A DNA stretch of 64,000 nucleotides, taken from positions 1,557,988 to 1,621,987 of the forward strand of contig NC_068994.1 of the NCBI RefSeq assembly GCF_001194135.2, in the 5' to 3' direction. This DNA comes from Octopus bimaculoides (lineage: Eukaryota). This document shows positions 1 to 41,714 of the stretch, one piece after another (position 1 is the first letter of the stretch; the number at the start of each line of letters is the position of its first letter). Made by a program: the position numbers and the translations under genes. Under the pieces are notes generated by a model, which was not told where the DNA came from, ran no database searches, and saw nothing but the letters and a program-made list of their open reading frames with translations.

Positions 1-2500
<2,500 letters not shown>

Positions 2501-5892: not shown

Positions 5893-5956
<64 letters not shown>

Positions 5957-6039
5957 TTTCCACATGCACACACATATATATGCACGTGTATATATACAAA
6001 GTGGCTATAGTGAAATGCTGGCCTTCAAATTGAAATGAG

Positions 6040-6366
6040 CAATTTGTACCAAATGCCGAGGCCTATTGTCAAAGCACGTGATATTATTGCACAACAATGC
6101 ACACCCACATACGGCCACTCTCAGTGCTGAAACCATTGGAAAAATTGAGTTTCAAGTTGCTGGAACACCCGGGGACAATCCAGATTTCAACCGTTCTGGC
6201 TATCACCTCTTTGAGCGACTCAAACATCCTTTACAAGATGGATGAAGAAGAGTAAGAAGCAGTGCATAGATGGCAGCACGATCAGCCATAAACCTTTTTC
6301 TCTGATGGAAGATGCCAGTTTGTGATCTGCTGGAAGAACTGAATCGAAAAGCCAAACGACGATGTT
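6040..6366 (+). mobile_element. Decayed mariner (IS630-Tc1-mariner) transposase 3' fragment
   Basis: Frameshifted translation resembles GLLSKxVILLHxNAxPHTA...TIxKLxFxxLEHPxxxPDxxxSxYHLFxxLK...DEExxEAVHxWxxxQPxTFFSDG...WKxxIEK, the mariner C-terminal catalytic region. Confidence 0.8.
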
Positions 6367-6714
6367 GCTCTCTTTTTACCCCTCACCTAGATAAATGTTG
6401 GGACAACAATGAGATGACCATCACCTCCAAAAGTAGTGCAACTCTACACTTGCTCATCATCACAAATCTTTTGCTAGATCAATGCTGACCCAAGACTGAA
6501 GTCGCTCATCCTTTTGAAGGGCTCCCTTTTTTTTTTTTTTTTTTGCTCTCCTGGGTTTTTTTCTAGTAATTCCCTTCACCTCTGGCGGGTAGGTGATTGG
6601 GGCAGGGGGTGGGAAGTGCCAGTTTGGCTGCTGACCACCCCTCACCATCCGACTCAAATTGTACTGGATTGCGTTAACCACAGCAGCACTCAGAACACAC
6701 ACACATGCGTGCAT
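6364..6714 (+). repeat. ~350-bp repeat, copy 1 (inverted partner at 41352-41714)
   Basis: Reverse complement of 41352-41714, with about 6 substitutions plus poly-T and (CA)n length differences by manual alignment. Confidence 0.95.
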
Positions 6715-7459
6715 TCATACACACACACACAAGGTCACCAGTGAGGTTGATGTGATATATATTTAGTTTGAACTTCTGAAGTTTAGTGTAGGTGTAAAAA
6801 AAAATCCTGGGGTAGGAAGGGACTTCCAAACAAATCTTAGTAGTGGGCAGAAAGGATCGGTTCCTTATTTAATTTGGGATGTGAGGGGTGCAGACAATAA
6901 ATTAAGAGCAGGACTCTCATGGGGTTTGGGATGAGCAAACAGGGGTTTTATAAATTCACTGAACAAAATCAGGGGACAAGTGAGAAGGTTTAGTAGCAAG
7001 AGTTGATTAAAGGTGGATTAAGCCTGACTGAGCCAAACTTTGAAGAAAAGACTTCCAGTTATGGCTATCCCTGCTCTCTTCTAGCCACTTAACATATCTA
7101 CAACTACCTTTGCCAGTGTGTCACTTCTCTTTGTCGACAGTAGAGAGTAATCAGAGAGTAATCTGAATTGATCCAACAGCTGTGTGGAGGCTGTAGGGGC
7201 TCCAACAGGCTCTGATTTCGGTCAGTAGTCAAAGCCACAGCACCATCCTATATACATTATTAGCATGGCATGTGGGTCTTAGTAAAGGGTCAGAAGGTGG
7301 CCAGCAAGTGGCTAGTAAATGGTCACTAAATGGTCAGTAAGTGATCAGTCGGTGGTTAGTAGGTGGTCAATAACTGAAGCAATTTCTGACACTGAAGAAG
7401 CAACCTGTTCTCTGGGATGTGCATCAATCCATTGATGATGGATGAACTCCACAACTTTG

Positions 7460-7670
7460 ATTGGCTTTCATGTTTGCAGATGGCTAATGAGATCAATTCT
7501 GGCCCTGATATAATAATGATTACATGTAGCATACATGTGACTGATGGTTTCATTTGAGGTTTTGGTTAACCAGACTCTGTGAAATATACCTTTACTTTCT
7601 GCTGCCTGAAGGCATGTCTCTTGTGAAGATTTAACGCCCTTTACAATTGACTGGGGATGCACAATAGGGG
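7460..7670 (-). mobile_element. RTE-clade LINE ORF2 3' end remnant
   Basis: ORF 7468..7662 reads SIVKGVKSSQETCLQAAESK...CNHYYIRARIDLISHLQT, matching the RTE C-terminal C..C..RARIGLISHLRTH motif. Confidence 0.65.
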
Positions 7671-9562
7671 ACCATTATGAGCCAGCAGTTTCTAGGATTC
7701 TGTCTTTCAATATTACAAAAGCCTATCCTCCTTCCGTGTTTCTTCTGGCCATAACTCGCCTTCCTCTTCTCTACATCAAATTCCTCACAATGGAATTATT
7801 TCGGTGTGACATATTGTGCATCCAGATGATGTCATTGGTCCAACTAAGCTGGTTCTTTTGCAACCAAAGTATTGAGGAATTCCAGCTATGGGAGCACTTC
7901 TATGCTTGGAACCTTGCCCTGCCATTTATTGTGGGATTGTCTGTGAAGACACGGAATAGAAGTGTAGAATTTGAGGAAACAGATGGTAGTTTGTGTCAGC
8001 AGAAAGTAAGAGAAATTATTGAAACTTTGGAAGAGATTGAATAGCACGAAGAAGGAAGGAAATAGAAACTTCTGGGGACACAATTTGTTTTTGTTTTTTT
8101 TTCAGGGAGAAAATAAATATCAAGTAGTGATGAAAGATATAAATATATATACAGGAAGAGGTTATTGTTTGAGATATGTTTCTGGTAATGTTATTAAGGG
8201 GGTAGCGGCCATGAGGAAACAAAAGAATCACAAGGACTAGCATTGGTAGTGACATTAAAGATTTTATTTCAGTTATTTTTCTGTCAAGACAAGGGAGGGG
8301 TTTGTGTGACTGTTTCTCAATCTGGGTTTCAGTCTTTGTTCTGCTGTAGAAAAAAAAATGTGGTCCAGAAGATATTAGATACTTTTGAGTTTGATAACAT
8401 TTGTAATAGATATTTCTGAGTGTGATAACATGTATATTACATACTGATTTCTACCATAGGCACAAGGCTTGACATTTTAATGGGGAGGGTGGATTAAACG
8501 AAGATCATTACATGACTGGTATTTTATAAATCAAGCTGCTGGGAAGGAGGAATATCCAAATAGACCTCAGCAGGATTTGAACTTGGAACATAAAGGGCCA
8601 AAACAAAATACCACAGGGCACTTTATTTGATGTTCTAACAATTTCAGCCAAGCCATTCTATATACTAAGGAATAAATAGCAAAGAAATAAAGTTGTGTTA
8701 TGTGAGGGACAACTTGATATTTCTAGGGGACAAACAGTGACAAAGCATTGACTATTGGCTGGAACAGGCTACAGCAGCCACACCTAGTGGACGACAAAGG
8801 AGGTAGTTTCAGAACAAGGAATAGAAATTGGAAGGAATTAGGTAAGAAGGGACTAAATCTAACATCTTGGAGATAAATATTTGATACATTTCAGCTGAGT
8901 GTTGGTAAGGATGAGGAGCAGCACATGGCTAAGGGGTCAGAAACTGGAAGGAGATGGGAATGATGATGCTGTTTGCTAATGTTATATATTATGGGGTAGT
9001 TGGGGGACTAAACACTATGCCAGGGGCAGAGTGGGACTACGGGAGTCATTTCTCTGGAAGAACATTGGTGGAGCAAGGGGAAATGGTGAATGTGAGAGTG
9101 TTACTATGAGGAGTTTCACAACAATGTGTATTAATTAGGCAGGGAGATAATGGAAAATAATGAGTGATGTGATTAATGATTGATCAACTTTAATGATAAC
9201 AAGAAACAATGAAAGTACGAAGACAGTTTGACTGACATACGATGATATTCCTTTCACTGGTGAAGAAGTTTCACATCATAACAATGGGGTTTTAAGTTCA
9301 GTCCCACTGAGGGGCACCTTAAACAAGTATCTTCTTTCATAGCTTTGCACCAACCAAAATCTTGTGTGGAATTTGGTCAGCGAAAACTGTGTAGAAGCCA
9401 ACCAAGAGAATTATTCCTTTTCTTGGGTGGTTTAATACCACTAGTGGCCTTCTAGCAGAGTGTGTGCCAGCATTTGGGTAAGGTTCCTATCCACCCTTGC
9501 CCATCATGCTCTGAGGCCATACATATGCTCTCGGGCAGTTCCTGCCTTTTCTATCTAAACCA

Positions 9563-9593
<31 letters not shown>

Positions 9594-12500
9594 GCTTGTT
9601 CCAGAAGGTGTTTGTAGAACTGATTAGTACAAAGCAGGTACCAACTGGTAGGGGTGGGATGGGGTAAATACTGGACCCAAATCACAAGATTAAACAATAA
9701 AGGTATTTAAAGTGGGAAAATAATAGTGGACGGCAGAAGTGGGTTCAATATCACAGAATGTCGGTTATATTACTGTACGTCAATGGAAATATATATTTGG
9801 TGGAACAACATTTATAGAAATTAGGGAATTGAAAACATTCAGCATAGAAGTGACCTTTGACTTGGTCCTTTAACAATGTAAAACAACAAGAATACATTAA
9901 AGGGTGGGTTGGATGGGAAACAGTTAAAACCAGGAGGACAAAGGTCAACAAAAGTCAGTATGGAATTTAATAGAGGGACAATTAATTGCCCCTTTTTCTT
10001 CATCCTAATACTGAATACAACCACATGGAGGTTCAGAATATAATGCAGGGGGGTGACTATGGGGGCAGCATTTCTAGCTAGGTTCAGTTCATTGTTGTAG
10101 GGGACACAACCACTTTGGGATTCAGGGTTGGAAGACAAGGAGAACTTCTGAACGCTGATGGAATTGGTTATGCAGAAGGTGCAACGGGACAAACAGAAAG
10201 AGTGCATCAGATGCACCAACAGAAAATACCAGCAACAATGATGCACTTTTGAACCAGGTCAAAGGTGAACGCCAAATGGCAAGACACATTTACAAATGTG
10301 GGGTCTAATAGAAGAATCAACAAAAGAAGTAAATGAAGATGATAACAACAACAATGATGATGATGATGATGATGATGACAATGACGATGCAATGACTGTG
10401 TTAATGTTGTTTATGATGATGATGATGATAATTGCAATGGTGATGACAATGACAATAGTGATGATGATGATCATGTCGATGATGATGATGATGATGGGGT
10501 TCTTAACTGGTCATATAGTATGAGGTAACCGTACACAACTGCAGAGTGTCCTCCTTCACTCACTCCAATGTTTGTTATTACAATAGGACTGTGGAGTGCG
10601 CACTTATACTCCACTCCAATTTTGGATACTTCTATACAACTTACAGAGTACGTACTTCCACTCAAATGTTTGTTATTTGCATGGGACCCAAAAGTGAAAG
10701 AGCAGCAATTGGGGCTATTACTGTTGTTTAGCCCCTGGTCAGCACTGATTAAACTTATTTACAAAGACATTCCAACCACGACCATTTCCTGTGGCTGCTG
10801 TTTGATAGAAACGAGGCCACCATTCCTATCATGTCATTGGAGCTCCCTGATGGATTTGTTGCTGATCACCATTGGTCAGCTCTGGTCAAGCAGAACCATG
10901 TTACTGTGCAGGGACCACTAAAGGAACTCTTACGATTCCACTTTAACAAGGGGCCATTGACAGACACAATTTGTGTTAACCACAGATTAGAGTATGTTTG
11001 TGTGTGTGTGGACATATATACGTATGTATGTATGTATGTATGTATGTATGTATGTATGTATGTATGTATGTATGGAGCAATCAGCTGTAATGATGTGATG
11101 TCATAGGAGCTGAGGTTGCCATTCATGAGATAAATGGTATAAAAAACAAAACCAAGAGTATGGCAATGACAGTTGACATAAAAGAGTATCCAGAGTTTGG
11201 TAGCAAGTTAGTTGTAGGAATGTTTTGTTTTGTTTTTTTTTTCTCTTTTTTTTTAAAAAAAAAATGTTTGTAATTAAAAATGTCAGCAGATAACTACAAT
11301 TAGAAACAGAATAAGGAACAACAACAGCAGTCTTTTTTTTCTTTTCCTCCCACATGGTATTGACCCTGAACCTTTGGGATCACTTCTGCCCAATTTAAAA
11401 AAACCCGTCACACTAAACCTACAAGTGGTTCAGTCGGTATTAAATATTTATAAAATAAACATTAATTAGCTAATTAAAAATAATTATTTAATAAGGAAAA
11501 GACCATATTAATTAAAAGACTAACAGTTATTTCAGCAAGCAGGCCACATAACTCAGACAAGTTCCAGTCTTATTAGACCTTATAATGTAGTCATTAGAAT
11601 ATCACATAAAAATTTGACATTAGTTCCTCCCTTTTATACTCTATCAAGGCTTGACAATACCTTTCATCCAACAAGTGATTAATAAAATATATACCAGTCA
11701 TATACTGAGGGAAACACACCAACAATACCATCATCGCACCCCCACCAAAATTTGTGGTCTTGTTATAAAATGTTAAAATCAATATTATAATTATTGTTAT
11801 TGAGTGAGAGAGCAGTGCATGCCATCAAAAGGACACTGGTGTACAAACATATGAAGCCCAAGGTACCCATCATAACTACCCGTCTGATAAGGGGTACACC
11901 AGGCACATGCATCACAACCATATGTGTGTGACATAGTGACCTCATATCAAGATAAACAGCACACATGACTTTGCAGTTGGGGGGGGGGGGGCTCTCTTAA
12001 AATTTTCTTCAGGTTGAATAGACCATCTCACTCAAAAGATTCCTGAAGGAGGGTTGTTTTAGGATGTTGAATAAAACACCCATGTTTCCAGAGGTGAATT
12101 ATTCAAACCCCAAAGAATTCTTCTCAACACATGGCTATGATGCTCCCCCCACTACTTCTGCTTGTGATCAGAGATACACATATCATCAGCCACTAGGGGA
12201 CACTCTACTGGTTAGGGTCAAACAACTGACAAGAAATTCTGTGGGGTTAAGCAGAATATTTGCTGTAGCCCATCTTTTATGCCAAGAAATGTACAGGATA
12301 ACACTTCAAATCAATTAAGGATGAGAAGTCATGAGAGCCATTGCCTGGTTCTGCATCAGGACATTTCTTCTTCTTCTTCTTCTTATTATTATCATCATTG
12401 TATTGCATTGTATCACATCACTACAATACTCTGAGATCAATTTCCACCATGTCTGATTCCCTTTCTACCCTTCCAGGTTCAAGAAAATAGAACTCAATTG

Positions 12501-13578
12501 AATTCTGGGATTGATTCAATTAACTGATTCCCTCACTGTCAACCAATTCATGTCAGTACATTAAGAATCATTATTCATCCAAATATTTTTGCATCATTGA
12601 AGATTTAGTGGTTGTAATTGTCCAACTTTACATTCTTTGTATAAACATTTCTTAATTCCGTCTGTCATCTTTTGCTTTCTTTCTTTCGGTTTTGTTTTCA
12701 AATAATTCATAGTGAGTCAAATAAAATAAGATGGAGTTTTTAAAGAATTTTTACTAATCCCAGAAGATAAAAGATAAGGAGTCAACCAACTATTTCAAGC
12801 AACAAAATTAAATTTTATGTACACACACACACATATATGCATGCACATATGCACACACACACAAATATATATATATATACACAAATACGTATACATATAT
12901 ATGAACTTTGATGATGTGAAGATCCAATTAACACCTCAAGCTAGAATTATATAATTCATCTTTTTATTCAACACTGACACCGATGTACGAATGATCCACA
13001 GCCTGGTTTCCTTAACCTGGAACCACAAAGGCACGAGTTTAAAGACCATAAATAAAGGACATACCTATAACTGAACAAAGTGTCTCCATCGTAACATATA
13101 CTTATTTTTTGAAATAATTGTTGGGGCGGGGGACAAGATAGAATTAAAGACATCATCCGCCACCCCCTTTTCACTAATCTCCCTCTAACACATTGACTTG
13201 TAACAAAAGTATAAGACCACACAGTTTTTGTTATTGTGGGCAGCTTTTGGTAATCAAATTTAACCCCAATATATATCTGGTATTTATTCATAGTAGTGAT
13301 GTTGGAACAGAGAAAGGTATGTCAACCATGATGTTAAAATATTAACCAAGAAACGAGCTTGTTGTTGATGTTGTTTGTGTTGTTGCTGTTGTTGTTATTG
13401 TTGCCTTTATTGTTGTTGTAGTTGTTTCAATTGTTGTTGTTGTTGTTGTTGTTCAGGTATTTAATAGATGAATATCACCCAGTTCTTTGTTGTCTTGAAG
13501 TGTCGTCTGAAACTGTCCAGTTTTTTAAATTTTTTTATCACCAACAGACCAGGTCAGGTTGAGACAGAGTCTTTTTTC

Positions 13579-13618
<40 letters not shown>

Positions 13619-14240
13619 TTAGTAGTAGTTGTTGTTGTTGGTGGTGTTGGTGTTGTTGATATTGTAGTTAAGTAAGCTCAGTCAGTTTCGGTCAAACTGA
13701 CCGATGGAAGGGAAGTAGGAACCTACTATGGAACGTCTTGGAAAGTTGGTCACTTGTATTCCATGGTTTTACCAGCAACGGGCAGGGATAGGTTGCTGCC
13801 GAGTCTAGCTTGTGGTAGATGGTTGTTGTTGTGGTTGAAGTTGGGTAGCCCCGGTCAGCCCTGCTCAAGTAGACCTGTGGTGGGTAAAACACTGGAGTAA
13901 GTCTGACCTACCTCATCACAGATGCCCTACCCATAATATATACATACTCCACACACACACATACACCAACACTGCATTCATCATCATCATCACCACCACC
14001 ACCACCACCACTACCATCACCACCAGCACCAGCACCACCACCATCACCATCATCATCATCATTGCCATTTCTGGATTCCCAAATGAATTCGAGTGGATCT
14101 GTTCCACACAGTATATTGTATGCAATAGTTGTAGAAAGTCCCACCACCATCTTCTATAAACAAGCACTCTCTCTTTCACATTCTCTCTTCTCTCTCTCTC
14201 TCTCTCTTTCTTCAGTCCTTATATGTAATTGAAGTCTTCG

Positions 14241-14480
14241 TACAGGTGGAACATTGCTTGCAAAGGTGCAAAATGGTTCACACCAGAGAAAAACTGCTCA
14301 CGCAGGTGCAACATTGTTTACAGAGGTGCCACATTGCTCATACAGGTGGAAAATTACTCATACAGGTGCAACATTGTTCACACAGGTGGACCATTGCTCA
14401 CATAGGTGCAACATTGCTCACACAGTGCACAGGTGCAACATTGCTCAAAAAGGTGGGACAGACCACACAAAGGTGTAACA
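14241..14480. repeat. 20-bp tandem repeat (acaggtgcaacattgctcac), about 11 copies, with degenerate extension to ~14730
   Basis: Direct 20-bp periodicity is visible, e.g. units at 14341, 14361, 14381, 14401. Confidence 0.9.
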
Positions 14481-15433
14481 TTCATTGTGCATATCTAACA
14501 TTCTCAACAACAGTGCAACTGGCTCCACACACCTATGACATCATTCACAGGTGTGTGACTGTCTACATTCCTACCCAGGTCATCACACAGGTGTGACTGT
14601 CTCCACGCAGAATGGTTTATATCCACACATGTTTGACATTCTCCAAGCAACTGCAGCATTACCATAAGTAAAGGGTCTCAATATAGCTGTGTAACCTGTT
14701 ACAGGTGTGTCCCTTGTCACACAGGTGTAACAATTCTCATATGGGTGTGAATCACAACACAGATTTTTTTAACCCAACAACACTAAATGCTGCCAACACG
14801 TTTGTACCCCTATAAAATCCCACATTTACAATATATAAGGCAGATTGGCAGAGATGTTAGAGCACTGGATAACATGCCTTGTGGTATTTCTTTCAACTCT
14901 TTATGTTCTGAGTTCAAACCCCACCAAAGTAAGTTTTGCCTTTCATCCGTTCAGGACCGATAACGATACACTAAATCCTGTAGAATGAGTTGGAGAAACT
15001 GTTAGAGGATGGGACATGATACCTTGTGGTATTTGATCCCTCCCTCTGTGTTCTGACAGCAACACATGTGACCACACACTAGTACCAACCTGTATCAACT
15101 TTTCCCTTGTATAAACATCGGTGATGAAGAGGGGTGGATGGGGGGGGAGACTTGTATGTTTGGACAACTGACCGTCTTCCGCACAAAATATTCTCCAGGC
15201 TTGCACACGCATGTGTTGGGGCATGGTATACCTTGACCAATGGAAACCCCATAGAGATACACATTTACTCAACAACAACAACTCACGTCTATTTCTGGCA
15301 AGTTGTCCTCGATCTCACAATACAATCTACAAAGATATCTTGCAAAAGCTCATAGTCACCAGTCTCAAATACTGCAACACTTCAGGCCATAACAAGCTTA
15401 TTATTGATATCACAACAAACTACTGAAGACATC

Positions 15434-15442
15434 ACTTACCAG
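15434..15442 (-). promoter_or_regulatory. 5' splice donor of the Pcdh large exon
   Basis: Minus strand CTG|GTAAGT, a consensus donor lying 9 codons before the in-frame stop. Confidence 0.8.
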
Positions 15443-27586: not shown

Positions 27587-30111
27587 ATATATATATGTAT
27601 ATAGATATATATGCATATACATATATGCATATATATCTTTATATATATATATATATATATAGATAGATAGATATATGTATGTATATACGTATATTCCTAT
27701 ACAACCAAGGCACAATGGCCCCTACCCCCATTATACATTATACATACACGAACCAACAAAGCAGCCACTATAGGGCAGTTCAAGTTGTTAAAAATAGCAG
27801 CGAAATCTCCCTCAAATCATACTGTACAGTCTTTGAAAAATACTTAAGGGATAACATGGTCCAAGGTGCCATAAACATAGAGAAAATGTGATGGCCACGG
27901 TTGGAAAGCCTTTACTAGATTTGTTCATTTAGGCTCACTAAAGGGAATACCACAGTACACCCACATAAAAACACATATACATGTTTATGTGTTCTGTTGT
28001 TTTATGAGTGCATGTATGTATATCCATGCATGCAATGGTATACATATTCATACACACACACACACACACCCCCCACACCCATATGTGCCCATTCACACAG
28101 AAATCATTGGAACGTCTTCACTTAAACGAAAAAGCTTCATTGCTTTGGTAGAGACCGGCTGGAATTGTGTGTAAAACACGCATACAATATACATACATAT
28201 GCATATACACAAACATATATACAATATACATACATACACACAAACATATACAATATACATACATATGCATATACATGCATACATACCTACAGATAAACAT
28301 GCATATATATATATGTATATATATATATATACACACACGTATGTATACACTGCTACACATATGTAGATAATGTGTATATACACGTTTACACATCAGCTAG
28401 AGCAGGAACAAATAAGAAAACCTCTTTGTGGAACAAATTGCTAGAAATAGAAACCAAATCACCTTCAAACTGCAACCTTACTGTCTTTCAAGAAAAGGAC
28501 ACATTCTGTTATATATTTCAAGGTGATGGGCATGGTTCGGATAATTCTGGCAACAGGTCTGTTGAATTGGAAATGAATTTGGGCCTAACAACAGCAACAA
28601 CACAGCGTATTAGATACAGTACACACACAGGTACTATGTACAGACCATAACGTAGATACACACACACAACATACAAATATACACTAGTTGTAAGCATACA
28701 TACTATGTATATACACACATCATTTAATACAAGGATACTGCTATATCTTAATATCATAACATATATTTTCATATATATGTGTATATACACATTCACACAC
28801 TCCTATATACACCATACACACACATACATGCATTTATATACGTGTGTTCTGTTCTATTTTAATTATTTGAAATCTGCCTCTGACGAAAGAGTTGGACTCT
28901 TCTTAACAAAGACGCAAAGCTCCATCGTTGGAATGGAGAAAACAAAACCCAAGTCACATTCTGAACTTGACAAAACTCTTGCATATCACATGTATATATG
29001 TCTGTGTGTATGTGAGTGTGTATATACAACTTTATAATAATTATTATGTATAAAGTTTGCACACAATATAACGAGAATGTATATAATATGTATGTAGAGT
29101 AGTGTATTGATTGTATTTTGCATACAGTGTGTAACGGATACAGTGGGTATAAATTGGGTGTTATGTGTATATATATATGGAATGTATAATAGGCATAATG
29201 AGTGTAGTGTGTGTATGTATTTATGTATGTATGTATGTGTGTATGTATTTATGTATGTAGGTATGTGTGTATGTATATATGTGTGTACATATCTATGTGT
29301 GTGTATATATGTATGTGTAGATAGATAGATAGGTAGACAGATAGACAGATAGATAGATTTATAAATAAATAGCGGGATAAATAGAGAGATAGGTAGACAG
29401 ATAAATTCAAAGGCAGATAGAGAGATAGACCACTAGCTACCTAGATAGATGAATAGATAGATGTAGAGAGAAGGAGAAAAAGAGAGGAAGATATATATAG
29501 GGAAAGTGAAAGTAGAACTGAAGGGAGATAATTTAACAAAAGAAATGTCTTCTATGGTGTGTTTGTGTGTGTATGTAAGTATCATGTATATAGCCTGTGT
29601 TTTGTACTGTTTATAACTATTGTCTGTGAGTGTTCTTAGTGTGTGTGTGTGTATGTGTGTAATGTTTATGGGTGAGAAAGTGTGTATGCGTGTGTGTTTG
29701 ATAGAAAGGGCAGATTAGGAGAAGCAGGAAATGAGGGGATGTCACCTGCACATGATCTGCTGCTGATCATGTGACTGCACGCCATTCAACAGGATCGAAC
29801 ACACAAACACACACACACAGCAACTGACTAAGATCTTAATGGAAGCTGCATTGTGATTACATACAAATATATACACACCACTATATTGATCAATGCATGT
29901 GTGTATATATATATATATGTGTGATTGTGTGTATGTATCTATTTATGCATGTTTGCATGTATGTATGTATGAATGTATTCCTGTGTATGTATGTGCATAT
30001 CGATCAGTGTATAGTCTCTCCCTACCAATCTATGTGTGTGTGCACTTATACACACACAAACACATTTGTGCACATATATCAATGTATATGTATATATATA
30101 CACACACAAAC

Positions 30112-30147
<36 letters not shown>

Positions 30148-31234: not shown

Positions 31235-31280
<46 letters not shown>

Positions 31281-32225: not shown

Positions 32226-32309
<84 letters not shown>

Positions 32310-33709: not shown

Positions 33710-33743
<34 letters not shown>

Positions 33744-33829
33744 AGATAACTTAGATTGGTTTCAGCCATTATCGTCCCAGGCAATCACTAACTCAATAGC
33801 ACCACCTGGAAAAGTCTTTTAGTTAATTA

Positions 33830-34110
33830 TTTCAGGATACCATGGATCACTCAAGCAGAGAATTGTTGTTGGTGAGGTGTATCCAGGTGTATGTGGTTTA
33901 TCCGGTATTTCCTGGAGGAATTTGTCCAGGTGCTGTTTGAAAGTTGTGAGGTCCTTTTCTACTTTAATTTCTTTCGTGACAACATTGAAAAGTTCAGGAC
34001 CATTTGCATTGAAGAAATTGTGTCGCAATGTTCTTATGTGATGTGATCTTGACCTTTGTAGGGGGTGCATTGCATGGGGGCCTGGCCTTGGCTGAATTGT
34101 AAACATAATA
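33830..34110 (-). mobile_element. CR1/L2-like LINE ORF2 3' end remnant
   Basis: ORF 33819..34130 contains TLRHNFFNANGPELFNVVTKEIK...FKQHLDKFLQEIPDKP..PGY, typical of the C-terminus of CR1/L2-group LINE ORF2. Confidence 0.7.
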
Positions 34111-36559
34111 CCATGTATATGCATGTGCATGTAGGGTGTGTATGTATAACAGGAATGCCGTGATACTGATTATGGATATCCACAATATGAGAATAAAGTA
34201 GTAATGTGAAGTCATGGTGGGTTGTTTTTGCTGTCATTGTGAATATTTACAAAAAATAAAATTTGGAGACTACGACATCTCATATATAAGTCTTGAAATC
34301 ACTGTTGGGAAGCAATATGAGAGATTTTGAATCAATGATGCAAGTCAGTCCAGCTGCTAGAAATAATAGCAATATCCCCTTCCTCAAATCACACATTAAC
34401 ATTTAAAAAAACAGAAATTCAAATTTTACAAGCGGGGGGGGAAGGAGAGGAAGAGAAGAGAGAGAAAGTAAAAGAGAGGGAGTAGGAGTAAGAGAAAGAC
34501 AAGCTTCCTCCTCCAAGACTGGTGAGTGGAGTGGTGGTGGTCGTGGTGGGAGGAATCTGCTTTAGACACTTGCAAAGGAACAGACTCTACTAAAGGTCCA
34601 TATGGGGGTATAAATAGTCTCTGTGACGACTGGGTCAAGCTGAAATGATTATATGAGGGGTACCACAAAATGGGATTGAACCCAGAACCATGTCATCGGG
34701 AAGTGAACTTTTGAAGCACACTTTTTAACCATGTCTGCATCCCTTAAATAAGGAAGGCCATATGAAACAATGTAATCCCAAGCATACAAAATATCATGGA
34801 GGGCATGGCTGGAACGGTTTCAGTCATCAGGTCTGGTTAATTAGAACTGAGCTGGGACTAAACAACAATGCTTTCAAATTAGGGGAGAAGGGGGTATGTT
34901 AATCCCATCATCCCCAGAGCTCAACTGGTCCTTATTTAATCAACTCTGAAAGGATGAAAGGCAAAGTCAACCTCGGTGGAATTTGAACTCAGAACCTAAA
35001 GACAGACGAAAGACCACAATGTATTTTGTCTGACATGCTACCAAGTCTACCTTAGCATCAACAAACTCATATTACTAATGGAAAAAGATTTGTTGAGAAA
35101 GTTGATCTCCGATAATAAAGAAGGAGCCAAGGGAAATAACTCAAATCAGGTCGATGATGATGTACTGAATGATGTCTTCATTAAATTTTCATTAATTTAC
35201 CTCTTTGTTGGAGAAAGAAATCAAAAACCTAGTGGTGCCTGTGAGTGAATCTCAAATACAAGGGGAGCTAATTTCAAGCAATTTAGAACTTAGTTTAGAG
35301 AACGCTCAATGTTGTGGTTATTGTTGCATAACCCTCCACCACTGGAGCCAGCAAATCCATGGTATGTAGTTAAGCAGTAAGTAAAAGGTAAATGAACTTA
35401 ACTGCCCAACAACATTTTACCACCAATCCAACCATAACCACCCTGCTCTGTTGGTGTGTAAGAAACAATATATTCAAGCTAAAAATCGGATTTGTTGTTG
35501 TTGTTGTTACTCGTCACTATTGTTGTTTTTCATAACGAGTCACCTCTAATTGAGTAGGAGCTTCCCAGGAGGCTAACATATAGAATATAGACAATCGCAG
35601 AAAAATTTTATTCAATTAAAATTATACCTGTAATTAATATAAAACTCATTAGCACTAATCATATTTGTTGTCCAGAAAGGCAAGGAGACAACTCCAAGAC
35701 CCGAAATGACAAAAGTTTGATTGAAATATGTATTGTGGAGTGTATAAGATCATTAGTAAATACTGTGGACATGTTTCTGCCTTATTAGTTTTTCTCAGTG
35801 ATATATAATTTTACCATCCCTGATGATAAGTAAAAAAACAAAAAAAACATTTACAAATTAAGGGTTTTAGAGAGTTCACAACATTAACTATGACAGCTGC
35901 CAATTAACTGTATATTCTTCCTGCAAAAGACATCCCTGGGAAATTTTTCCTGTGACATTATTTTGAATTGTGAAAATTACAAAGGATCTATCATCCTTTG
36001 CAGTGATTTGAACTCAAAACATAGAGGGATGTAACTAAATACCAAAAATTGCATGTTGTTAGCTACAAGGAGATATATTGGGGAGGTGAGGCTGGTAGAG
36101 GCTGTTAAATCGATTATATCAATTAACAATAATCAATAATTGATATTTTAAACACTGGGATCATAGTTATTGATTTGTTTGAAAATATATTGATAACTTT
36201 AAAGCCTGAGGCATTTTCTCACTTCCTCCTCCTCCTCCCTCTCTCCTTCTGTATTTCTCTTTCTCCCCTATCTCCCTCCCTCACTCAATCCCCTTCTNNN
36301 NNNNNNNCTGTATTTCTCTTTCTCCCCTATCTCCCTCCCTCACTCAATCCCCTTCTCCCTCTCTCCTTCCTTCTCTCCCTGTTTCTCCTCTCTTACTCTC
36401 CTCCCATTGCTATGTCAGTACCACCCTGGGCCCTTTAAGAGTTTTTGAAATGATTCAAGTCTGTCCGTGTATCTGTATGTGGGGGAGAGAGAGAAAAAGA
36501 GATGGAATGTGTGATGACGAAATAACCACAGACTAAGATGGTGGTAGGTGGGTGTGGTG

Positions 36560-37270
36560 GTGGCGGTGGGCTGGTTGCTGAACATTAAGTGGGACACATT
36601 AATCAGAGCCAGGATAATGAGAGTGATGAGTTTAATATGTTGAAGTAAAAAGACAGGGTGGTCATGATTGGAATGTTTGACAACCTGACGCTAAACAAGA
36701 TGGGACACTTTATACAATGTAGTCCTAGATAGACGATGTCTGAATGAATGAGTGACTTGTTAGTCAACTGGAATGTCTGTGATCATCAGTCTGCTGGATC
36801 AAGACTAATGAGCTTGGTGGGGGGGGGGGGGTACTAAACAACAGCAACAAGGTCTAATTAGGGTAACGAGCTTCTACATGTTCACCGAGCTTGCTAGAAA
36901 TAGAAGCTAAATCCCCTTAAATCACATATTGTCAAAAAAAGGAAAGAACAGATTAGATAATGTAGTCCTAGATACACTATGTCTGTAAAATATGATGGCG
37001 GGAGAATAGTTAGAATGTCTTGATCATAGGTTTGCGAGATCAGGAATGACCTAGGGTTAAACAGCAACAACAGCAAAGCAACATAATCAGAGCAAAAAAG
37101 GGCCTTCATGTGGACACTCGGGCTGGTAGAAATAGCAGCCAAAACTCATTTAAATTACATTCTGCTAACTTATGAAAGAAAGGATATAGTGGATAATCTC
37201 AATGTCTGAAAACTATGTGGGACAGTCATGGCTGGATTTGATGTGATCGCTGACCTTGGGTTAAATAACA
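36560..37270 (+). mobile_element. Cluster of 3-4 copies of SINE-like family C. Other copies: 3085-3170 (-), 10720-10790 (-), 13845-13905 (-), 18400-18560 (+), 23000-23130 (+), 24000-24190 (+), 27780-27910 (+), 28440-28600 (+), 40235-40410 (-), 48255-48330 (-), 61560-61625 (+), 63720-63910 (-)
   Basis: Recurrent consensus gctagaaatagcagccaaatctccctcaaatcaca...aatgtagtcctagatacac...ggtcatggctggaatg..tgatcatagg...gacctggggctaaacaacaac. Confidence 0.75.
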
Positions 37271-38429
37271 ACATGGACAACAAAGTGTTAGCAGGAGAGA
37301 AACCATCACTATATTCTCATGTGGGAAATGGGAAGTGTGATAAGTGGGATTGTGTGGCATTCATGCCTTTCTCAGTAACATTATTAGCAAAATTATAGTG
37401 AAGGTAGTCGAATGTGAAGTGGAAGGAAGTCGGATGTTTGGCTTCGATTCCATGAATTATTGAAATATAGTTTCAATAAATAATGGAAGGTAGATGGAAA
37501 TACAGATTAAATAAAGTACTATCACTTTATTGAAGACTGGGTCTTAGGATTCTCTTGTGGCCTACAAACACACACATATAGCATACTGCAGTTGTTTTGT
37601 TGCCTTCAGGTTAGATAGTCACTAAAATCTCTCTTAATATATAATTTACCTCTGGTCCCCAGTGACGATGTCGGGTTTATTAATGTCGACATTGGAGTGA
37701 TTGAGAGATTTCAGAGGAATGTCTTACAAATATTTATATAAAAGTTTGAATATTTCTGACTGTACCCCAGGGTGACCTCAGTACATTTACAGACATACTG
37801 TCATACTCATATATATATATATATATATACATGTCATGTGTGTGTATAACATTATTGTAGATAATATTTTCAAATATATAGCATAAGACTATATATAAAT
37901 ATATATATGTGTGATAGGCTGAGTACATGTATGTGTGTGTGTGGGGTGTATTTTGGTGTGTGTACATTTTTGTGTCTGCTGTGTGTGCATTTCTATGTAT
38001 GTGTGTTTAGAGGTTAGCAGAAGTGGCCCAGTGTGTAAAGAGCCAGTTTATATGACTGAAAACATGCTACCAACCAATCGATTGCAACAAGATTATTGAT
38101 CACTTAGTGATCAATGATATAAGGAGCAGTCATACAATGGGGTTATGGTTACATTGACATGGTTTTCACTCAAATATAACCCTTTCATTTAAACCATTTA
38201 CACTGACTGAGGTTAAAATGTTGACTTAACGAGCCTATAATTTCCAGTTCAATCTCAGTGCACAGCACTTTGGACAAGTGTCTTCTACCATAGCCTTGGA
38301 TAGACTTAAAGTATTATGACTTGAATTCATCATCATTATTCTTCTCCTCCGACATCCCCCTCTCCCTCCCCTCCTTCTCATCATCATCATCGTCATCATT
38401 CCCTGAGCATTTCTGTCTTCATGTCTTAG

Positions 38430-38655
38430 AACACACGGGGCTGATTACCAAGTTCCCATGGCATATAAGTGACCAAAACTCAAAACATTCTCCCCTGGAT
38501 GTGACACAAGTCCATCGCAGGGGTGACCCATCTACAGCTGAGTGGACAGGAGTGATGTGAAATGAAGTGTCTTGCTCAAGAACTCAATGCACCACTGCTA
38601 GTTTGGGACTCGAAACCATGATCTTCTGATCATGAATGCAACAGCCCAACCACAA
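38430..38655 (-). mobile_element. SINE fragment (tRNA-head type)
   Basis: Plus strand tgaagtgtcttgctcaagaactcaatgc...gggactcgaaaccatgatc is the reverse complement of a B-box-containing SINE head. Confidence 0.5.
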
Positions 38656-39504
38656 TAATGTGTGTAGGAACAATCGATCTGTGGAAGCATTTTAACACCA
38701 CTCTCTCATCCATGGATACCTTTAAGAGGGTCCCCTCTGATGTAAGCCTTTAGTGTATCTCTTTGGTTTCAACCTTCTGGCCCCTTTTTGACTTGTGACC
38801 ATTAAAAGCAGCTGGGACTGAAGGCTTTCAGAGCTAGAACTGATGTAAATGGAGACCTTCATAGGGTTATGTTCTCTGTGTGTGTAACTAGGGGCTGTTT
38901 CCTGGCTGAACTGGTTGGGGGACACCCAGGGATTAAATAGCAACAACAACCTTCAATAGTTCTGTCAAGATATATGATCATTCTATGTGGATTAAGAGAG
39001 ATTAGTAAACTAGTATCAACATGTTACTAAATTTATGCAACAGGTTTCAAGTTGTGTTTATTTCTCCATACACACATACAATACATATGCACATAAATAG
39101 ACATATATATACATGTATGCGTATTTTTTCAATGTGTATAAATAACACGGAAAAAATAAATAGTTACCAGGGTAGCAAAAATTCACATAAGTGCTAAGAA
39201 TGTTACAACCTACTAATAAAGGTAGAAGTTCTAAGGTTTAGTGAAATGTTTAGATATGGCATAGATAAATTAAGAAATGGAGTTAAATGCAGATTACAAT
39301 GGCCTATTGATGTGTTTTCTTTCTCTTTTTTCCTTGACGAGATGATTATGTTGTCTTACATCATTTTCTTCCCTCGGGAATAATACCAATGTTTTCTTCG
39401 AAACATATGTCGGAAGTATAAAGATTTGAATAACATCTGTGTTTAAATCTATTTCTTAATTTATATATATATATGGATGGATGGATGGATGGATAATATA
39501 GATA

Positions 39505-39830
39505 AAACGTGATTGATGCCAGGGCTGCCTGACTGGCTCCCATGCTGGTGGCATGTAAAAAGCACCATCTGAACGTGACTGATGCCAGTGCACCCTGACT
39601 GGCTCCCGTGCCGGTGACACATTAAAAGCACAAACCGAACGCAGTCAATGCCAGGCATATAAAAATCAGCCACTACACTCTCGGAGTGGTTGGCGTTAGG
39701 AAGGGCATCCAGTTGTAGAAACATTGCCAAATCTGATTGGAGCCTGGTGCAGCCTTCTGGCTCTCCAGATCTGTCAAACCGTCCAACCCATGCCAGCATG
39801 GAAAATGGACATTAAACGATGATGATGAGA
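39505..39830 (+). mobile_element. SINE-like family D with internal gtgccggtggcacgtaaaaagcac repeats and a (GAT)n tail. Other pieces: 23560-23715 (+), 27178-27265 (+, runs into a gap), 50180-50220 (-)
   Basis: ggcgttaggaagggcatccag...gcatggaaaatggacattaaacgatgatgatga and its reverse complement recur. Confidence 0.7.
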
Positions 39831-40172
39831 TAGATAAGATTGAAAACTATAGATAGAAGATAGGTAGACAGATAGATAACTATAGATAGATGTAATGGTA
39901 GATAGACAAACAGACAGACGGATAATGCATAGATAGATAGATGTGTGTGTGATCCCATACAAAAATCCCAGTTCAGCAGCCTCTCATCAGTTTATTAGAG
40001 AACAAAAGGGTTCATACAAACTGTGGGTCCCAGCTGGAGAAAAACTATTATTGTAGGACCTTTATTCTCTGCCTTTCTTTCTTTCTCTCCCCACCCCCAC
40101 ATGCATACACATACACACAGTACTGCTATCTCTCATTTTCTCTTTCTCTCTCTCTCTCTCTGTCAAGCACAA

Positions 40173-40214
<42 letters not shown>

Positions 40215-40985
40215 TCTCTCAACTACAGTAGTTTGATGAGCCCTGGGTCAACCCTGATCCACTAGACCTATGATCAAAGGTAGTCCAACCATAACCATCA
40301 TTTAGAAGTGTATCTAGGATTGCACTGCCTAGTGTCTTTTATTCTTTTAAAATATGCTAGGGAGTGTGATATGAGGGGGGATTTGGCTGCTCTTTCTAGC
40401 TGATGGGCCAACCAGAAAGTGGTCCTCCTTGTTAGTTAGTAGTAGTAGTAGTAATGGTAGTACTGGTGATTGAAGTAGTAGTAGTAGTAGTTGTGGCTGC
40501 TGTGTCATGTGAGAGATGCAGCACAGTGCCAACCAAACATGCACTTAACGCGATGCATTGCGTAATTCATGCACAAGTGGTGGTGGTGGTGATGGTATAG
40601 AGCTTGTGATGGTGGCGGAGTAATGCTAGAAATAATGGTGGAGGTGGTGAGGGTGGTGGCATTGGTTGATAGATGTGGTGGTGGTGGTGGTTTGCAGTTT
40701 TGTAGCCCTCTCCTTAATCTGATTGAGCAGTCTTCTGATCCAAGACATTCTTGCCATGACCAACCAGTCTTATTACTGTGTAGAGGACAAACAACCCCAC
40801 ATGACAAGACTGTAAAGCATGGATTGAGGGAAGTTTAATTGTTATTTCTAGCAGACCAAAGGACCACATAATCTATTGTTCATCCATTGGTGGTGGTGGT
40901 GGTGGTGGTGGTGGTGGTTATAGCAGTGCTTGTCTTTGTGGTATGGAGTGATTGTGGTGGTATATATTGGCACTTGCAGTAGTGT

Positions 40986-41031
<46 letters not shown>

Positions 41032-41351
41032 AGTAGTAGTAGTAGTAGTAGTAATAGAAGTGGTAATCCCTTGTATGTGGCGGGGGGGAAGGAGGGTGGT
41101 ATTTGGTGCCATTCAAAGTGTGGTGGTTGTTGTGATGTGACAGTGAACTGTATGTGGTGTGACACAGGGCGAGGGTTGTAGAGAGAGAAAGAGAGAGAGA
41201 AGACTAGTGTTGATGTGGTGATGGGGTGGATACTCTATGGGAGTGGAGGGGTGGAACTGAACCAGATCTTAGCTACAGTCATGTGTGTGTATATGAGAGT
41301 ATGTATATGTATCTCTCTCTTTCTGCATAGTATAACTGAACGTGTGTGCCT

Positions 41352-41714
41352 ATGCACGCATGTGTGTGTGTATGTGTGTGTGTTCTGAGTGCTGCTGTGG
41401 TTAACGCAATCCAGTACAATTTGAGTCAGATGGTGAGGGGTGGTCAGCAGCCAAACTGGCACTTCCCACCCCCTGCCCCAATCACCTACCCGCCAGAGGT
41501 GAAGGGAATTACTAGAAAAAAACCCAGGAGAGCAAAAAAAAAAAAAAAAAAGGGAGCCCTTCAAAAGGATGAGCGACTCCAGTCTTGGGTCAGCATTGAT
41601 CTAGCAAAAGATTTGTGATGATGAGCAAGTGTAGAGTTGCACTACTTTTGGAGGTGATGGTCATCTCATTGTTGTCCGAACATTTATTTAGGCGAGGGGT
41701 AAAAAGGGAGCAAC
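41352..41714 (-). repeat. ~360-bp repeat, copy 2 (inverted partner at 6364-6714)
   Basis: Same alignment. Both loci also give near-identical ORFs in the track (MKGSLFFFFFCSPGFF..., ...LAKDL) on opposite strands. Confidence 0.95.

What the first reader, a model, noticed from the sequence alone, without database searches (positions are those of the whole stretch)
6364..41714. Near-identical ~350-bp element in inverted orientation bracketing the protocadherin exon, 35 kb apart
Seen: 6364-6714 and 41352-41714 are reverse complements with about 6 substitutions (~98%), whereas the interspersed repeat copies elsewhere in the window are visibly far more diverged. The element matches none of the SINE families in the window, has no evident TIRs or ORF, and carries G-rich motifs (GGGGCAGGGGGTGGGA, CCGCCAGAGGTGA). 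Established: inverted repeats in one pre-mRNA form dsRNA that ADAR edits and that can promote back-splicing, and they can mediate inversion. Coleoids edit RNA heavily and have expanded protocadherins. Inference: this is a young duplication or gene conversion that could pair across the Pcdh large exon if both copies lie in its introns, mark an inversion breakpoint, or belong to a young unannotated element family.
Basis: partly seen in the sequence, partly recalled or inferred. Interest (0 to 1): 0.7.

Follow-up and report, generated by a model that had tools for sequence, protein, structure and literature searches.

The report
Inverted repeat pair: probably two haplotypes
The two near-identical inverted 350-bp stretches around an octopus protocadherin exon are really in the assembly, but public reads indicate a single-copy intronic segment whose second copy is seen only in the 2015 reference animal, most likely as its other haplotype or a private rearrangement, so it is not a species-wide hairpin-forming repeat.

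Summary
Window 6364-6706 and 41372-41714 are reverse complements, 337/343 identical and gapless. The match extends to 6714 and 41352 across a 12-nt CA/TG indel.

The window is Octopus bimaculoides, from the 2015 short-read contigs re-scaffolded with Hi-C. By RefSeq annotation both arms lie in introns of a 115.6-kb protocadherin gene.

The element is not a repeat family. Its 31-mers sit at single-copy depth in every DNA run examined, and it has no tRNA or Rfam match, no TIRs and no meaningful ORF.

Arm B is not a fixed second copy. Its diagnostic words occur in only one public run, a mate-pair library of the reference animal. Four non-reference runs show only A alleles, at about 1x depth. In the reference animal A-type and B-type sequence are 1:1 and together make one diploid dose. 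Two B-type variants also occur joined to locus A sequence in other animals.

Both B junctions lie in repeats. One is a TG microsatellite native to that site in all animals. The other is a high-copy repeat.

Best reading (about 0.5): arm B is the reference animal's second haplotype, stitched in by the assembler. Main rival (about 0.33): a real, rare templated inverted insertion. RNA contigs showed no hyper-editing.

The parts
6364..6714 (.). Arm A (element E, locus A). A unique 343-nt body plus a (CA)n-TGCGTGCAT tail. It lies in the last intron of protocadherin isoforms X4/X5.
   Evidence: In DNA runs X1, X4 and X6 one contig (776 nt, 5931-6706) runs from unique left flank into the element without a fork, at flank depth (X1 50.3 vs 50.5). 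Low-depth unspliced RNA contigs are colinear with it.
41352..41714 (.). Arm B, the reverse complement of arm A with six substitutions and a 12-nt longer TG/CA tail. It lies in the first intron by annotation. Its existence as a second copy in cis is doubtful.
   Evidence: B-specific words are held only by X17. In X1, X2, X4 and X6 the only contig on its body is arm A's contig, stopping exactly at 41372 and 41714.
6527..6544 (+). T18 run inside arm A (A18 at 41534-41551 in arm B). It splits the element into two halves of about 165 nt. Contigs often break here.
   Evidence: The X19 RNA contig ends here.
41352..41383 (+). Degenerate TG microsatellite ATGCACGC(ATGTGTGTGTGT)2 at arm B's left edge. 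It is native to this site in all animals. The first 20 nt are identical to arm A's own tail, which has one 12-nt unit instead of two. It is the proposed site of a false join, or of homology-primed copying.
   Evidence: Words 41318-41381 are held by all 15 genomic or unclassified (non-RNA) runs at share 1.00 (X3 0.75). From 41351 to 41384 is 34 nt, so no 31-mer can link the unique flank to the element. The 48-nt unitig 41354-41401 is bounded by forks.
41722..41802 (.). High-copy interspersed repeat fragment starting 7 nt after arm B's right edge. Unique sequence resumes at about 41803.
   Evidence: k-mer depth is 3100-5400 against about 50 for single copy in X1. No contig bridges 41714 to 41766 in any paired-end run.
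41369..41377 (+). TGTATGTGT, a 9-nt direct repeat whose second copy is at 41716-41724. The two copies bracket arm B. This is either a microhomology or target-duplication-like footprint, or chance in TG-rich DNA.
   Evidence: Read directly.
15440..17882 (-). Protocadherin main exon. The ORF spans 15410-17902, the ATG of isoform X2 is at 17848, the upstream acceptor is at 17883/17882, and the donor follows 15440.
   Evidence: It is 100% identical to XP_014776002.1, protocadherin beta-11 isoform X2 of Octopus bimaculoides.
13695..13874 (-). Terminal coding exon of isoforms X1/X2. For these isoforms arm A lies downstream of the gene.
   Evidence: tblastn, 60/60 aa.
5229..5252 (-). Terminal micro-exon LPTRTSKK-stop of isoform X5 (XP_014776006.1), preceded by a polypyrimidine tract and cag. 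Use of this exon places arm A in an intron.
   Evidence: The same C-terminus is found in the Argonauta hians orthologue P0002.
3334..3360 (-). Terminal exon of isoform X4 (RWWWWCWCW), encoded by a triplet repeat. The exon is doubtful.

Best explanation
Element E is an ordinary single-copy stretch of intronic DNA in the O. bimaculoides protocadherin beta-11-like gene. It is not a mobile element. Arm B is not a second genomic copy lying in cis with arm A.

Arm B is the 2015 reference animal's other haplotype of the same segment. That haplotype differs at six SNPs, carries a 12-nt longer CA tail, and has a structural difference immediately left of 6364. The short-read assembly kept both haplotypes.

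The B-type piece was joined between two contig ends through repeats. On one side is a TG microsatellite at 41352-41383, native to that site, which matches the B-type tail of E for at least 31 nt. On the other side is a high-copy repeat at 41722-41802. This is a 'heterotype false duplication'.

Shown: single-copy depth, the 1:1 A:B ratio, reference-only support for the B-specific words, the repeat nature of both junctions, and B-type variants joined to locus A sequence in other animals.

Inferred: that the two joins are false, and that the B haplotype has a structural variant at E's left edge.

Consequence: in a real chromosome there is one E per haplotype, so there is no intramolecular 343-bp dsRNA, and no ADAR or back-splicing role.
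For: (1) Copy number. In non-reference DNA runs the contig carrying the left flank plus E has flank-level depth: X1 50.3 vs 50.5/53.8, X4 42.5 vs 44.2/48.5, X6 54.4 vs 56.4, X3 12.4 vs 13.3/10.2. A true 2x control, 17409-17870, reads 103.4 in X1.

(2) In the reference sample's unbiased library X2, single copy is 15.7 +/- 2.4 and the 2x control is 34.3. The contig lying wholly inside E (6513-6706) is 15.5, which is 1x rather than the 1.4x or 1.8x expected for an extra copy.

(3) X17 unitigs: the A-allele branch with left flank is 4.8, the B-allele branch is 4.55, and shared E is 9.2-9.5. That is a 1:1 ratio. Collapsed (single-path) contigs of X12, X7 and X2 pick A or B alleles at 6499 and 6650 about equally.

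(4) B-specific words (41660-41740) occur in one run only, X17. X1, X4 and X6 carry A alleles at every diagnostic site.

(5) B-type variants occur joined to locus A sequence elsewhere. The X13 RNA contig 6115-6544 joins the A left flank to 6499G. The 48-nt unitig joining E to the 12-nt-longer tail is present in X1 and X4, which lack B SNPs.

(6) Both junctions lie in repeats, and no paired-end contig bridges them. The microsatellite at the left junction is native in all animals. The fork falls exactly where E-specific bases begin (41384), as expected if the same 30-mer has two genomic contexts.

(7) Contig sequence of this assembly is the 2015 shotgun assembly (PMC9068888). Haploid-level depth plus haplotype-specific k-mers in both copies are the published signature of heterotype false duplications (PMC9516828).
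Against: One small mate-pair fragment in X17 (41577-41721) carries all the B alleles it spans (5 of 6) followed by 7 nt (CTGTATG) that match the assembled right flank and not locus A's flank. So the B-type copy really abuts different sequence in the reference animal.

A misplaced haplotig landing only 35 kb away and inverted is what a real local rearrangement would also give.

There is no N gap within 5 kb of arm B.

The 48-nt unitig sits near 1x rather than the 0.5x expected for a heterozygous tail allele.

The depth pattern is also compatible with both copies lying on one haplotype and the other haplotype lacking the left flank and E.

Logan contigs are cleaned graphs. The B branch is pruned even in the reference animal's own paired-end runs, so its absence from other animals rests on depth and allele picks, not on reads.
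Confidence: 0.5

Rival explanations
1. Arm B is a real, recent and rare inverted templated insertion. A break or stalled fork occurred in the TG microsatellite at 41352-41383. The free end annealed to the 20-nt identical CA tail of E, 35 kb away on the opposite strand. It copied about 340 nt up to 6364 and rejoined at TGTATGTGT microhomology (an MMBIR/SDSA-type template switch). It sits in cis with arm A on one haplotype of the reference animal. In carriers, a pre-mRNA spanning both introns could fold into a 343-bp duplex around the protocadherin exon.
For: The assembly is contiguous across arm B with no gap. The X17 fragment joins B alleles to the assembled right flank. The 9-nt direct repeat TGTATGTGT brackets the insert, and 20 nt of identity lies at the other edge. 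Inverted orientation and tens-of-kb distance are typical of template switching (PMC8421209, PMC11724301). The mismatch cluster next to the far junction (4 in 40 nt) fits error-prone synthesis. B alleles seen at locus A in other animals would simply be the donor haplotype.
Against: Total E dose in the reference animal is about 1x, not 1.5-2x (X2 15.5 vs 15.7 +/- 2.4). The A:B ratio is 1:1, not 2:1. To fit these, the other haplotype must independently lack the left flank and E. The 48-nt junction unitig is present in X1 and X4, which show no extra E dose and no B alleles.
Confidence: 0.33
2. The reference animal is heterozygous for an inversion of about 35 kb containing the protocadherin exon, or for another rearrangement that moves E. 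Each haplotype has one E. The assembly is a mosaic showing E at both ends of the inverted segment.
For: One E per haplotype fits the 1x dose and the 1:1 ratio. The junction of the reverse complement of E with the right flank, seen in X17, is the predicted breakpoint. The inverted orientation and spacing follow directly. Short inverted identical microsatellites sit at 6695-6714 and 41352-41371.
Against: A simple inversion keeps the left flank on both haplotypes. But left-flank k-mers are at about half dose in X17 (4.8 vs 9.4), the flank-plus-E contigs are about 0.7x in X2, X12 and X7, and there is no fork at 6364. Arm B's left neighbour in the assembly is not the reverse complement of locus A's right flank, as a simple inversion predicts.
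Confidence: 0.1
3. E is a young mobile element or a fixed segmental duplication, present twice or more in every O. bimaculoides genome, and acts as a conserved intronic inverted repeat.
For: 98% identity, sharp boundaries, an internal A/T run, and transcription of arm A.
Against: k-mer depth is single copy in all runs. The mean depth of the left-flank-plus-E contig is 0.92-1.05x of flanks in four non-reference runs, where 1.42x is expected for two copies. There are no TIRs and no pol III or tRNA-like features. No third copy was found in 64 kb. B words are absent from all RNA runs indexed.
Confidence: 0.04

Closest known systems
Heterotype false duplication in unphased short-read assemblies (Ko et al. 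2022, PMC9516828)
   Same: Two assembly copies differ by heterozygous SNPs. Each copy-specific k-mer set is at haploid depth and the summed depth is diploid. The edges lie in repeats where contig graphs break. The second copy is supported only by the assembled individual.
   Different: The published cases are mostly adjacent and separated by an N gap or a depth gap. Here the copy is 35 kb away, inverted, and embedded in gap-free sequence. One read-level fragment supports 7 nt of its novel flank.
Templated insertion / MMBIR template-switch products (PMC8421209, PMC11724301)
   Same: A short segment of a few hundred bp is copied from a nearby locus in inverted orientation. The junctions lie in microhomology (a 20-nt microsatellite identity and TGTATGTGT). 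There are no transposon hallmarks.
   Different: The dose data in the reference animal do not show the extra copy that such an insertion must add. A germline example of this size has not been documented here at read level.
Intronic inverted repeats that form dsRNA for ADAR editing and promote circRNA (for example inverted Alu pairs in primates)
   Same: As assembled, the arms flank an exon within one annotated transcription unit and would form an almost perfect 343-bp duplex.
   Different: Those repeats are high-copy elements, fixed, and shown to be edited. This pair is single-copy sequence and is not shown to be in cis in any chromosome. RNA contigs of four runs show no A-to-G or T-to-C clusters on arm A. 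The arms are 35 kb apart.
Cephalopod tRNA-derived SINEs
   Same: Size of about 170-350 nt, and an internal A-rich run.
   Different: There is no tRNA-like head or Rfam match and the copy number is single. The genuine SINE-like repeats in this window are 72-82% identical to each other.

Membership tests
Interspersed repeat / transposable element family | Many copies per genome (k-mer depth well above single copy) | tested here: not met
   E-body bins are at exactly the single-copy contig depth in X1, X2, X4 and X3 even at 90% likeness. Only the T-run and the CA tail are high. There is no third copy in the window.
Interspersed repeat / transposable element family | Structural hallmarks: TIRs, a pol III/tRNA-like head, a terminal poly(A), or target-site duplications at both copies | tested here: not met
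   No Rfam or ARAGORN hit. The ends GTTGCTC... and ...CAGAACACACA are not inverted repeats of each other. The A/T run is internal. A 9-nt direct repeat is seen at arm B only, in TG-rich DNA.
Fixed segmental (inverted) duplication | Shared sequence at 2x depth, and both junctions present in independent individuals | tested here: not met
   The depth ratio to flanks is 0.92-1.05 in X1, X4, X6 and X3 where 1.42 is expected. The X2 contig inside E is 15.5 against 15.7 +/- 2.4, with the 2x control at 34.3. Right-junction words occur only in X17.
Heterotype false duplication | Haplotype-specific k-mers in both copies at haploid depth, summing to diploid depth | tested here: met
   X17: 4.8 (A branch) plus 4.55 (B branch) equals 9.2-9.5 (shared). 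The X2 shared contig is at 1x.
Heterotype false duplication | Unsupported joins (a gap, a depth gap or discordant pairs) at the edges of one copy | tested here: inconclusive
   No contig of any paired-end run bridges 41351->41384 or 41714->41766, and both edges are repeats. However, 31-mer contigs cannot bridge them in principle. Raw read pairs were not examined.
Heterotype false duplication | Variants of the extra copy segregate as alleles at the true locus | tested here: inconclusive
   6499G sits on a contig linked to the locus A left flank in X13. The 12-nt-longer tail is joined to E in X1 and X4. The four clustered SNPs were not seen at locus A.
Templated (template-switch) insertion | Microhomology at both junctions, with the donor nearby and often inverted | tested here: met
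   20-nt identity at 41352-41371 and 6695-6714; TGTATGTGT at 41369-41377 and 41716-41724; 35 kb apart and inverted.
Templated (template-switch) insertion | Insert present in addition to the donor on the same chromosome | not testable with these tools
   This needs single molecules or phased reads. The dose data argue against an added copy but allow the case in which both copies lie on one haplotype.
ADAR-substrate / circRNA-promoting intronic inverted repeat | Both arms inside one primary transcript | tested here: inconclusive
   The RefSeq gene range is 115.6 kb. The 5' exon lies outside the window, and the 3' exons at 5229-5252 and 3334-3360 lie beyond arm A. There is RNA coverage of arm A. 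No RNA run holds arm B words.
ADAR-substrate / circRNA-promoting intronic inverted repeat | Clustered A-to-I changes on the arms, or back-splice junctions 15440->17882 | tested here: inconclusive
   RNA contigs of X13, X14, X16 and X19 show only 6107A>G, 6357C>A, 6421T>C and 6499A>G. Two of these (6357, 6421) are also in DNA runs, and there is no cluster. Contigs hide partial editing. Back-splice reads were not examined.

The most novel reading that the evidence does not exclude
Arm B is a genuine germline template-switch insertion, or marks a 35-kb inversion, that segregates in O. bimaculoides. On carrier chromosomes it creates a near-perfect 343-bp inverted repeat across a protocadherin exon. 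That would be a natural polymorphism in which carriers and non-carriers could be compared for intronic dsRNA, ADAR editing and circular RNA output of one clustered protocadherin.
Probability: 0.3. Interest if true: 0.5.

Novelty: not a real feature. Interest (0 to 1): 0.2.

Why it matters
If arm B is a haplotype artefact, the result is a caution. The O. bimaculoides chromosome-scale reference still carries 2015 short-read contig sequence. Near-identical 'young duplicates' or inverted repeats found in it, including inside the protocadherin arrays, where gene conversion and recent duplication are actively discussed, need a dose check before they are interpreted.

If arm B is real, it is a private or rare structural variant rather than a conserved regulatory structure. 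Its main value would be as a natural test of whether an intronic inverted repeat is enough to trigger editing or exon circularisation in a coleoid.

Tried and rejected
(1) SINE or TE family. Rejected by single-copy k-mer depth, the absence of Rfam and tRNA hits, and the absence of further copies.

(2) Coding or exon function of E. Only short low-complexity ORFs are present, and neither the 84-aa ORF in arm A nor the 109-aa ORF in arm B is on record as a called gene.

(3) Using X12 and X7 depths to call dose. Abandoned, because single-copy controls range from 12 to 34 with GC dependence (r 0.65-0.79). X2, X1 and the X17 fork flows were used instead.

(4) Fetching the orthologous loci of O. sinensis and O. 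vulgaris to test conservation of E. The gene ranges, 166.5 and 180.8 kb, are too long, so no DNA was returned. The same happened for the O. bimaculoides locus.

(5) Laying reads on 40800-42300 and 3100-8900.

(6) Counting which animals carry the junction of E with the long tail. This was uninformative. All large DNA runs, including the reference animal's, hold the same 2 of 3 sampled words.

(7) Reading the 2015 genome paper for library and assembler details. The paper is not held. That the 2015 assembly used Meraculous and Nextera mate pairs is my recollection. Only the Nextera adapters are directly seen, in X17.

(8) Pfam on the larger ORFs between the arms. No hits.

Full report
**Observation**

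The two arms are in the sequence as described. The repeat finder gives 6364-6706 against 41372-41714: 343 nt, 98% complementary, 34,665 nt apart. This is far above every other inverted pair in the window; the others are SINE-like, 180-220 nt long and 72-82% identical.

BLASTN of the arms with 400-nt flanks gives 337/343 identities with no gaps. A further 20-nt block follows after a 12-nt indel in the CA/TG tail, and there is no similarity beyond it.

The six substitutions are at 6371, 6385, 6390, 6400, 6499 and 6650. Four of them lie within 40 nt of the left boundary. A relaxed BLAST of the element against the whole window finds only low-complexity matches to its T-run and CA tail.

The window has 11 N gaps. 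None lies within 5 kb of either arm, but three lie between the arms.

**What the element is not**

Rfam finds nothing in the window at gathering thresholds, and nothing in 6250-6800 at E<=1. ARAGORN finds no tRNA-like sequence. The ORFs are short and of low complexity, and the ends are not inverted repeats. Internally the element is two halves of about 165 nt separated by T18 (6527-6544).

**Context**

- The 830-codon ORF at 15410-17902 (minus strand) is 100% identical to Octopus bimaculoides protocadherin beta-11 isoform X2 on a 60.6-Mb chromosome-scale record.
- The chromosome-scale assembly is Hi-C scaffolding of the 2015 shotgun assembly (PMC9068888). Contig-level sequence therefore dates from the short-read assembly.
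- Isoforms X1/X2 end in an exon at 13695-13874.
- Isoform X5 ends LPTRTSKK, encoded at 5229-5252 behind a polypyrimidine tract and cag acceptor.
- Isoform X4 ends in a triplet-repeat exon at 3334-3360.
- Isoforms X1, X4, X5 and X6 start with MKEKQANTST, which is not encoded anywhere in the window. The main exon has an acceptor at 17883/17882.
- The annotated gene range is 115.6 kb and overlaps the next protocadherin gene on the same strand.

By annotation, then, arm A is in the last intron (isoforms X4/X5) and arm B in the first intron. If both arms were in one pre-mRNA they would form a 343-bp duplex with three G-U pairs and three mismatches (-682 kcal/mol).

**Copy number**

Public runs of the same organism hold the element. 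These runs are available as Logan 31-mer contigs.

- In X1, X4 and X6 a single 776-nt contig runs from unique left flank (5931) through the whole element to 6706. Its mean word depth equals that of the flanks: X1 50.3 vs 50.5 and 53.8; X4 42.5 vs 44.2 and 48.5; X6 54.4 vs 56.4. X3 shows 12.4 vs 13.3 and 10.2.
- Two identical copies would raise these contig means about 1.4-fold.
- A genuine 2x stretch, 17409-17870, reads 103.4 in X1 and 34.3 in X2, so doubling is visible in these data.
- E is therefore single-copy in these animals and is certainly not a repeat family.

**Arm B in reads**

- On arm B, the only contig covering the element body in X1, X2, X4 and X6 is the arm A contig. It shows the six mismatches and stops exactly at 41372 and 41714.
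- The sequence just right of arm B (41722-41802) is a high-copy repeat with depth in the thousands. Unique contigs resume at 41766.
- Words specific to arm B's SNP cluster and right junction (41660-41740) are held by one run only in the whole index. That run is X17, a 2015 run of sample S2, evidently the reference-genome sample.
- X17 is a Nextera mate-pair library; adapters are visible. It contains a small fragment, 41577-41721, carrying all the B alleles it spans plus 7 nt (CTGTATG) of the assembled right flank.
- The B branch is pruned from the reference animal's own paired-end contig sets. Its absence from contigs is therefore not proof of its absence from reads.

**Dose in the reference animal**

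- In X17 the unitig carrying the left flank plus the A alleles (5980-6430) has depth 4.8 and the B-allele unitig has 4.55. The shared stretches have 9.2-9.5, so the ratio is 1:1.
- The collapsed (single-path) contigs of X12, X7 and X2 carry A or B alleles at 6499 and 6650 about equally often, which again points to equal dose.
- Six single-copy control contigs give 15.7 +/- 2.4 in X2 with no GC trend. X12 and X7 are GC-biased (range 12-34), and I did not use them for dose.
- In X2 the contig lying wholly inside E (6513-6706) has depth 15.5. This is one diploid dose, not the 22 expected for an added heterozygous copy or the 28 expected for an added homozygous copy.
- The contig of left flank plus E is at only about 0.66x in X2 (10.4), about 0.7x in X12 and X7 after GC correction, and 0.5x in X17. 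It is 0.9-1.0x in non-reference animals.

In the reference animal, therefore, A-type and B-type E are each present once per diploid genome, and the left flank seems to be attached to only one of them.

**B-type variants elsewhere**

- An RNA contig of X13 (6115-6544) joins the locus A left flank to 6499G, the B allele.
- A 48-nt unitig identical to 41354-41401 joins the 12-nt-longer tail to the first 18 nt of E. It is present in X1 and X4, which have no B SNP alleles and 1x E, as well as in the reference runs.
- Words covering 41318-41381 are held by every genomic or unclassified (non-RNA) run. The TG microsatellite ATGCACGC(ATGTGTGTGTGT)2 is therefore native to that site in all animals.
- From the last unique base (41351) to the first E-specific base (41384) is 34 nt, so no 31-mer can prove the join.
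- The 48-nt unitig begins exactly at the first k-mer containing 41384. This is what is expected if the same 30-mer has two genomic contexts.

**Interpretation**

The most economical reading is a heterotype false duplication (criteria in PMC9516828). Its features here are haplotype-specific k-mers in both copies at haploid depth, a summed depth of one diploid dose, support only from the assembled individual, and edges in repeats. On this reading arm B is the reference animal's second haplotype of locus A, joined into the scaffold through a microsatellite identical to its own tail on one side and an interspersed repeat on the other.

I put this at about 0.5, because several facts are awkward for it:
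- The X17 fragment shows that B-type E really abuts non-locus-A sequence, so that haplotype must carry a structural difference at 6363/6364.
- The piece landed only 35 kb away and inverted.
- No N gap is nearby.
- The 48-nt unitig is nearer 1x than 0.5x.

The main rival (about 0.33) is a real, rare templated inverted insertion of the MMBIR/SDSA type (PMC8421209, PMC11724301). It would be primed by the 20-nt identity between the two microsatellites and closed at the 9-nt TGTATGTGT repeat that brackets arm B. It explains the location, the orientation, the junctions and the mismatch cluster near the far end. To fit the dose data, however, the other haplotype must independently lack the left flank and E.

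A heterozygous 35-kb inversion (about 0.1) fits one E per haplotype and the right junction. It does not fit the half-dose left flank or arm B's assembled left neighbour. A fixed duplication or a mobile element is essentially excluded (about 0.04).

**Function**

RNA contigs of four runs cover arm A colinearly with its flanks at low depth and without splicing, as expected for intronic RNA. One 2484-nt contig ends at the genomic A/T run, which suggests internal priming.

The only differences from the genome are 6107A>G, 6357C>A, 6421T>C and 6499A>G. Two of them (6357 and 6421) are also present in DNA runs. There is no editing cluster, although contigs would hide partial editing. No RNA run in the index holds arm B words.

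Nothing here supports a dsRNA, editing or back-splicing role. Under three of the four readings the two arms are never, or only rarely, on one chromosome.

**Limits**

All read evidence is from cleaned 31-mer contigs. Those reads, the original 2015 paired-end reads, or any long-read data would settle the question directly.

**Verdict**

The interpretation as a functional cis inverted repeat or a young element family is not supported. The most likely explanation is an assembly representation of heterozygosity, and the alternative is a private structural variant. Interest is low (0.2).

Noticed in passing
window 17409-17870: The 5' end of the protocadherin main exon (signal-peptide region) has twice the single-copy k-mer depth (X1 103.4 vs about 50; X2 34.3 vs about 16). 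The contigs carry TG>GA at 17767-17768. A near-identical copy of this exon start must exist elsewhere, from recent duplication or gene conversion between protocadherin paralogues.
   Followed up: partly
window 1-64000 and beyond (gene range): The RefSeq gene range is 115.6 kb and overlaps the next protocadherin gene on the same strand. The orthologues in O. sinensis (166.5 kb) and O. vulgaris (180.8 kb) show the same layout. A far-upstream 5' coding exon (MKEKQANTST) lies outside the window. This looks like upstream-exon usage spanning neighbouring genes, and sits oddly with the statement that cephalopod protocadherins are simple duplicated genes (PMC9068888).
   Followed up: partly
window 5229-5252 (-), 13695-13874 (-), 3334-3360 (-): There are three alternative C-terminal exons. 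The 8-aa LPTRTSKK micro-exon, 10 kb downstream, is conserved in Argonauta hians and has a good acceptor. The RWWWWCWCW exon is encoded by a triplet microsatellite and is probably an annotation artefact.
   Followed up: partly
window 6527-9005 approx.: A 2484-nt RNA contig in X19 is colinear with the genome and ends at the genomic A18/T18 run inside arm A. This suggests oligo-dT internal priming on intronic RNA rather than a discrete transcript.
   Followed up: no
window 41722-41802: An interspersed repeat fragment of about 80 nt has k-mer depth 60-100 times single copy but no other copy in this 64-kb window. Its family was not identified.
   Followed up: no
window 1125-1314, 1752-1988, 27473-27694, 44163-44372, 57008-57201: A SINE-like repeat family of 180-220 nt, 72-82% identical between copies, occurs in both orientations. 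At least two copies abut N gaps (1125, 27473), which shows where the short-read contigs broke.
   Followed up: no
window 6004-6309: The left flank of arm A contains a moderately repeated segment, 3-13x extra depth at 90% likeness. A diverged relative appears at single-copy depth in the reference sample: contigs match 6085-6109 and 6220-6239 at the same 110-nt spacing.
   Followed up: no
window 6357, 6421: The SNPs 6357C>A and 6421T>C are seen in DNA (X1, X4) and RNA (X13, X14) of non-reference animals. They are ordinary polymorphisms that could be mistaken for RNA editing if only RNA were examined.
   Followed up: yes
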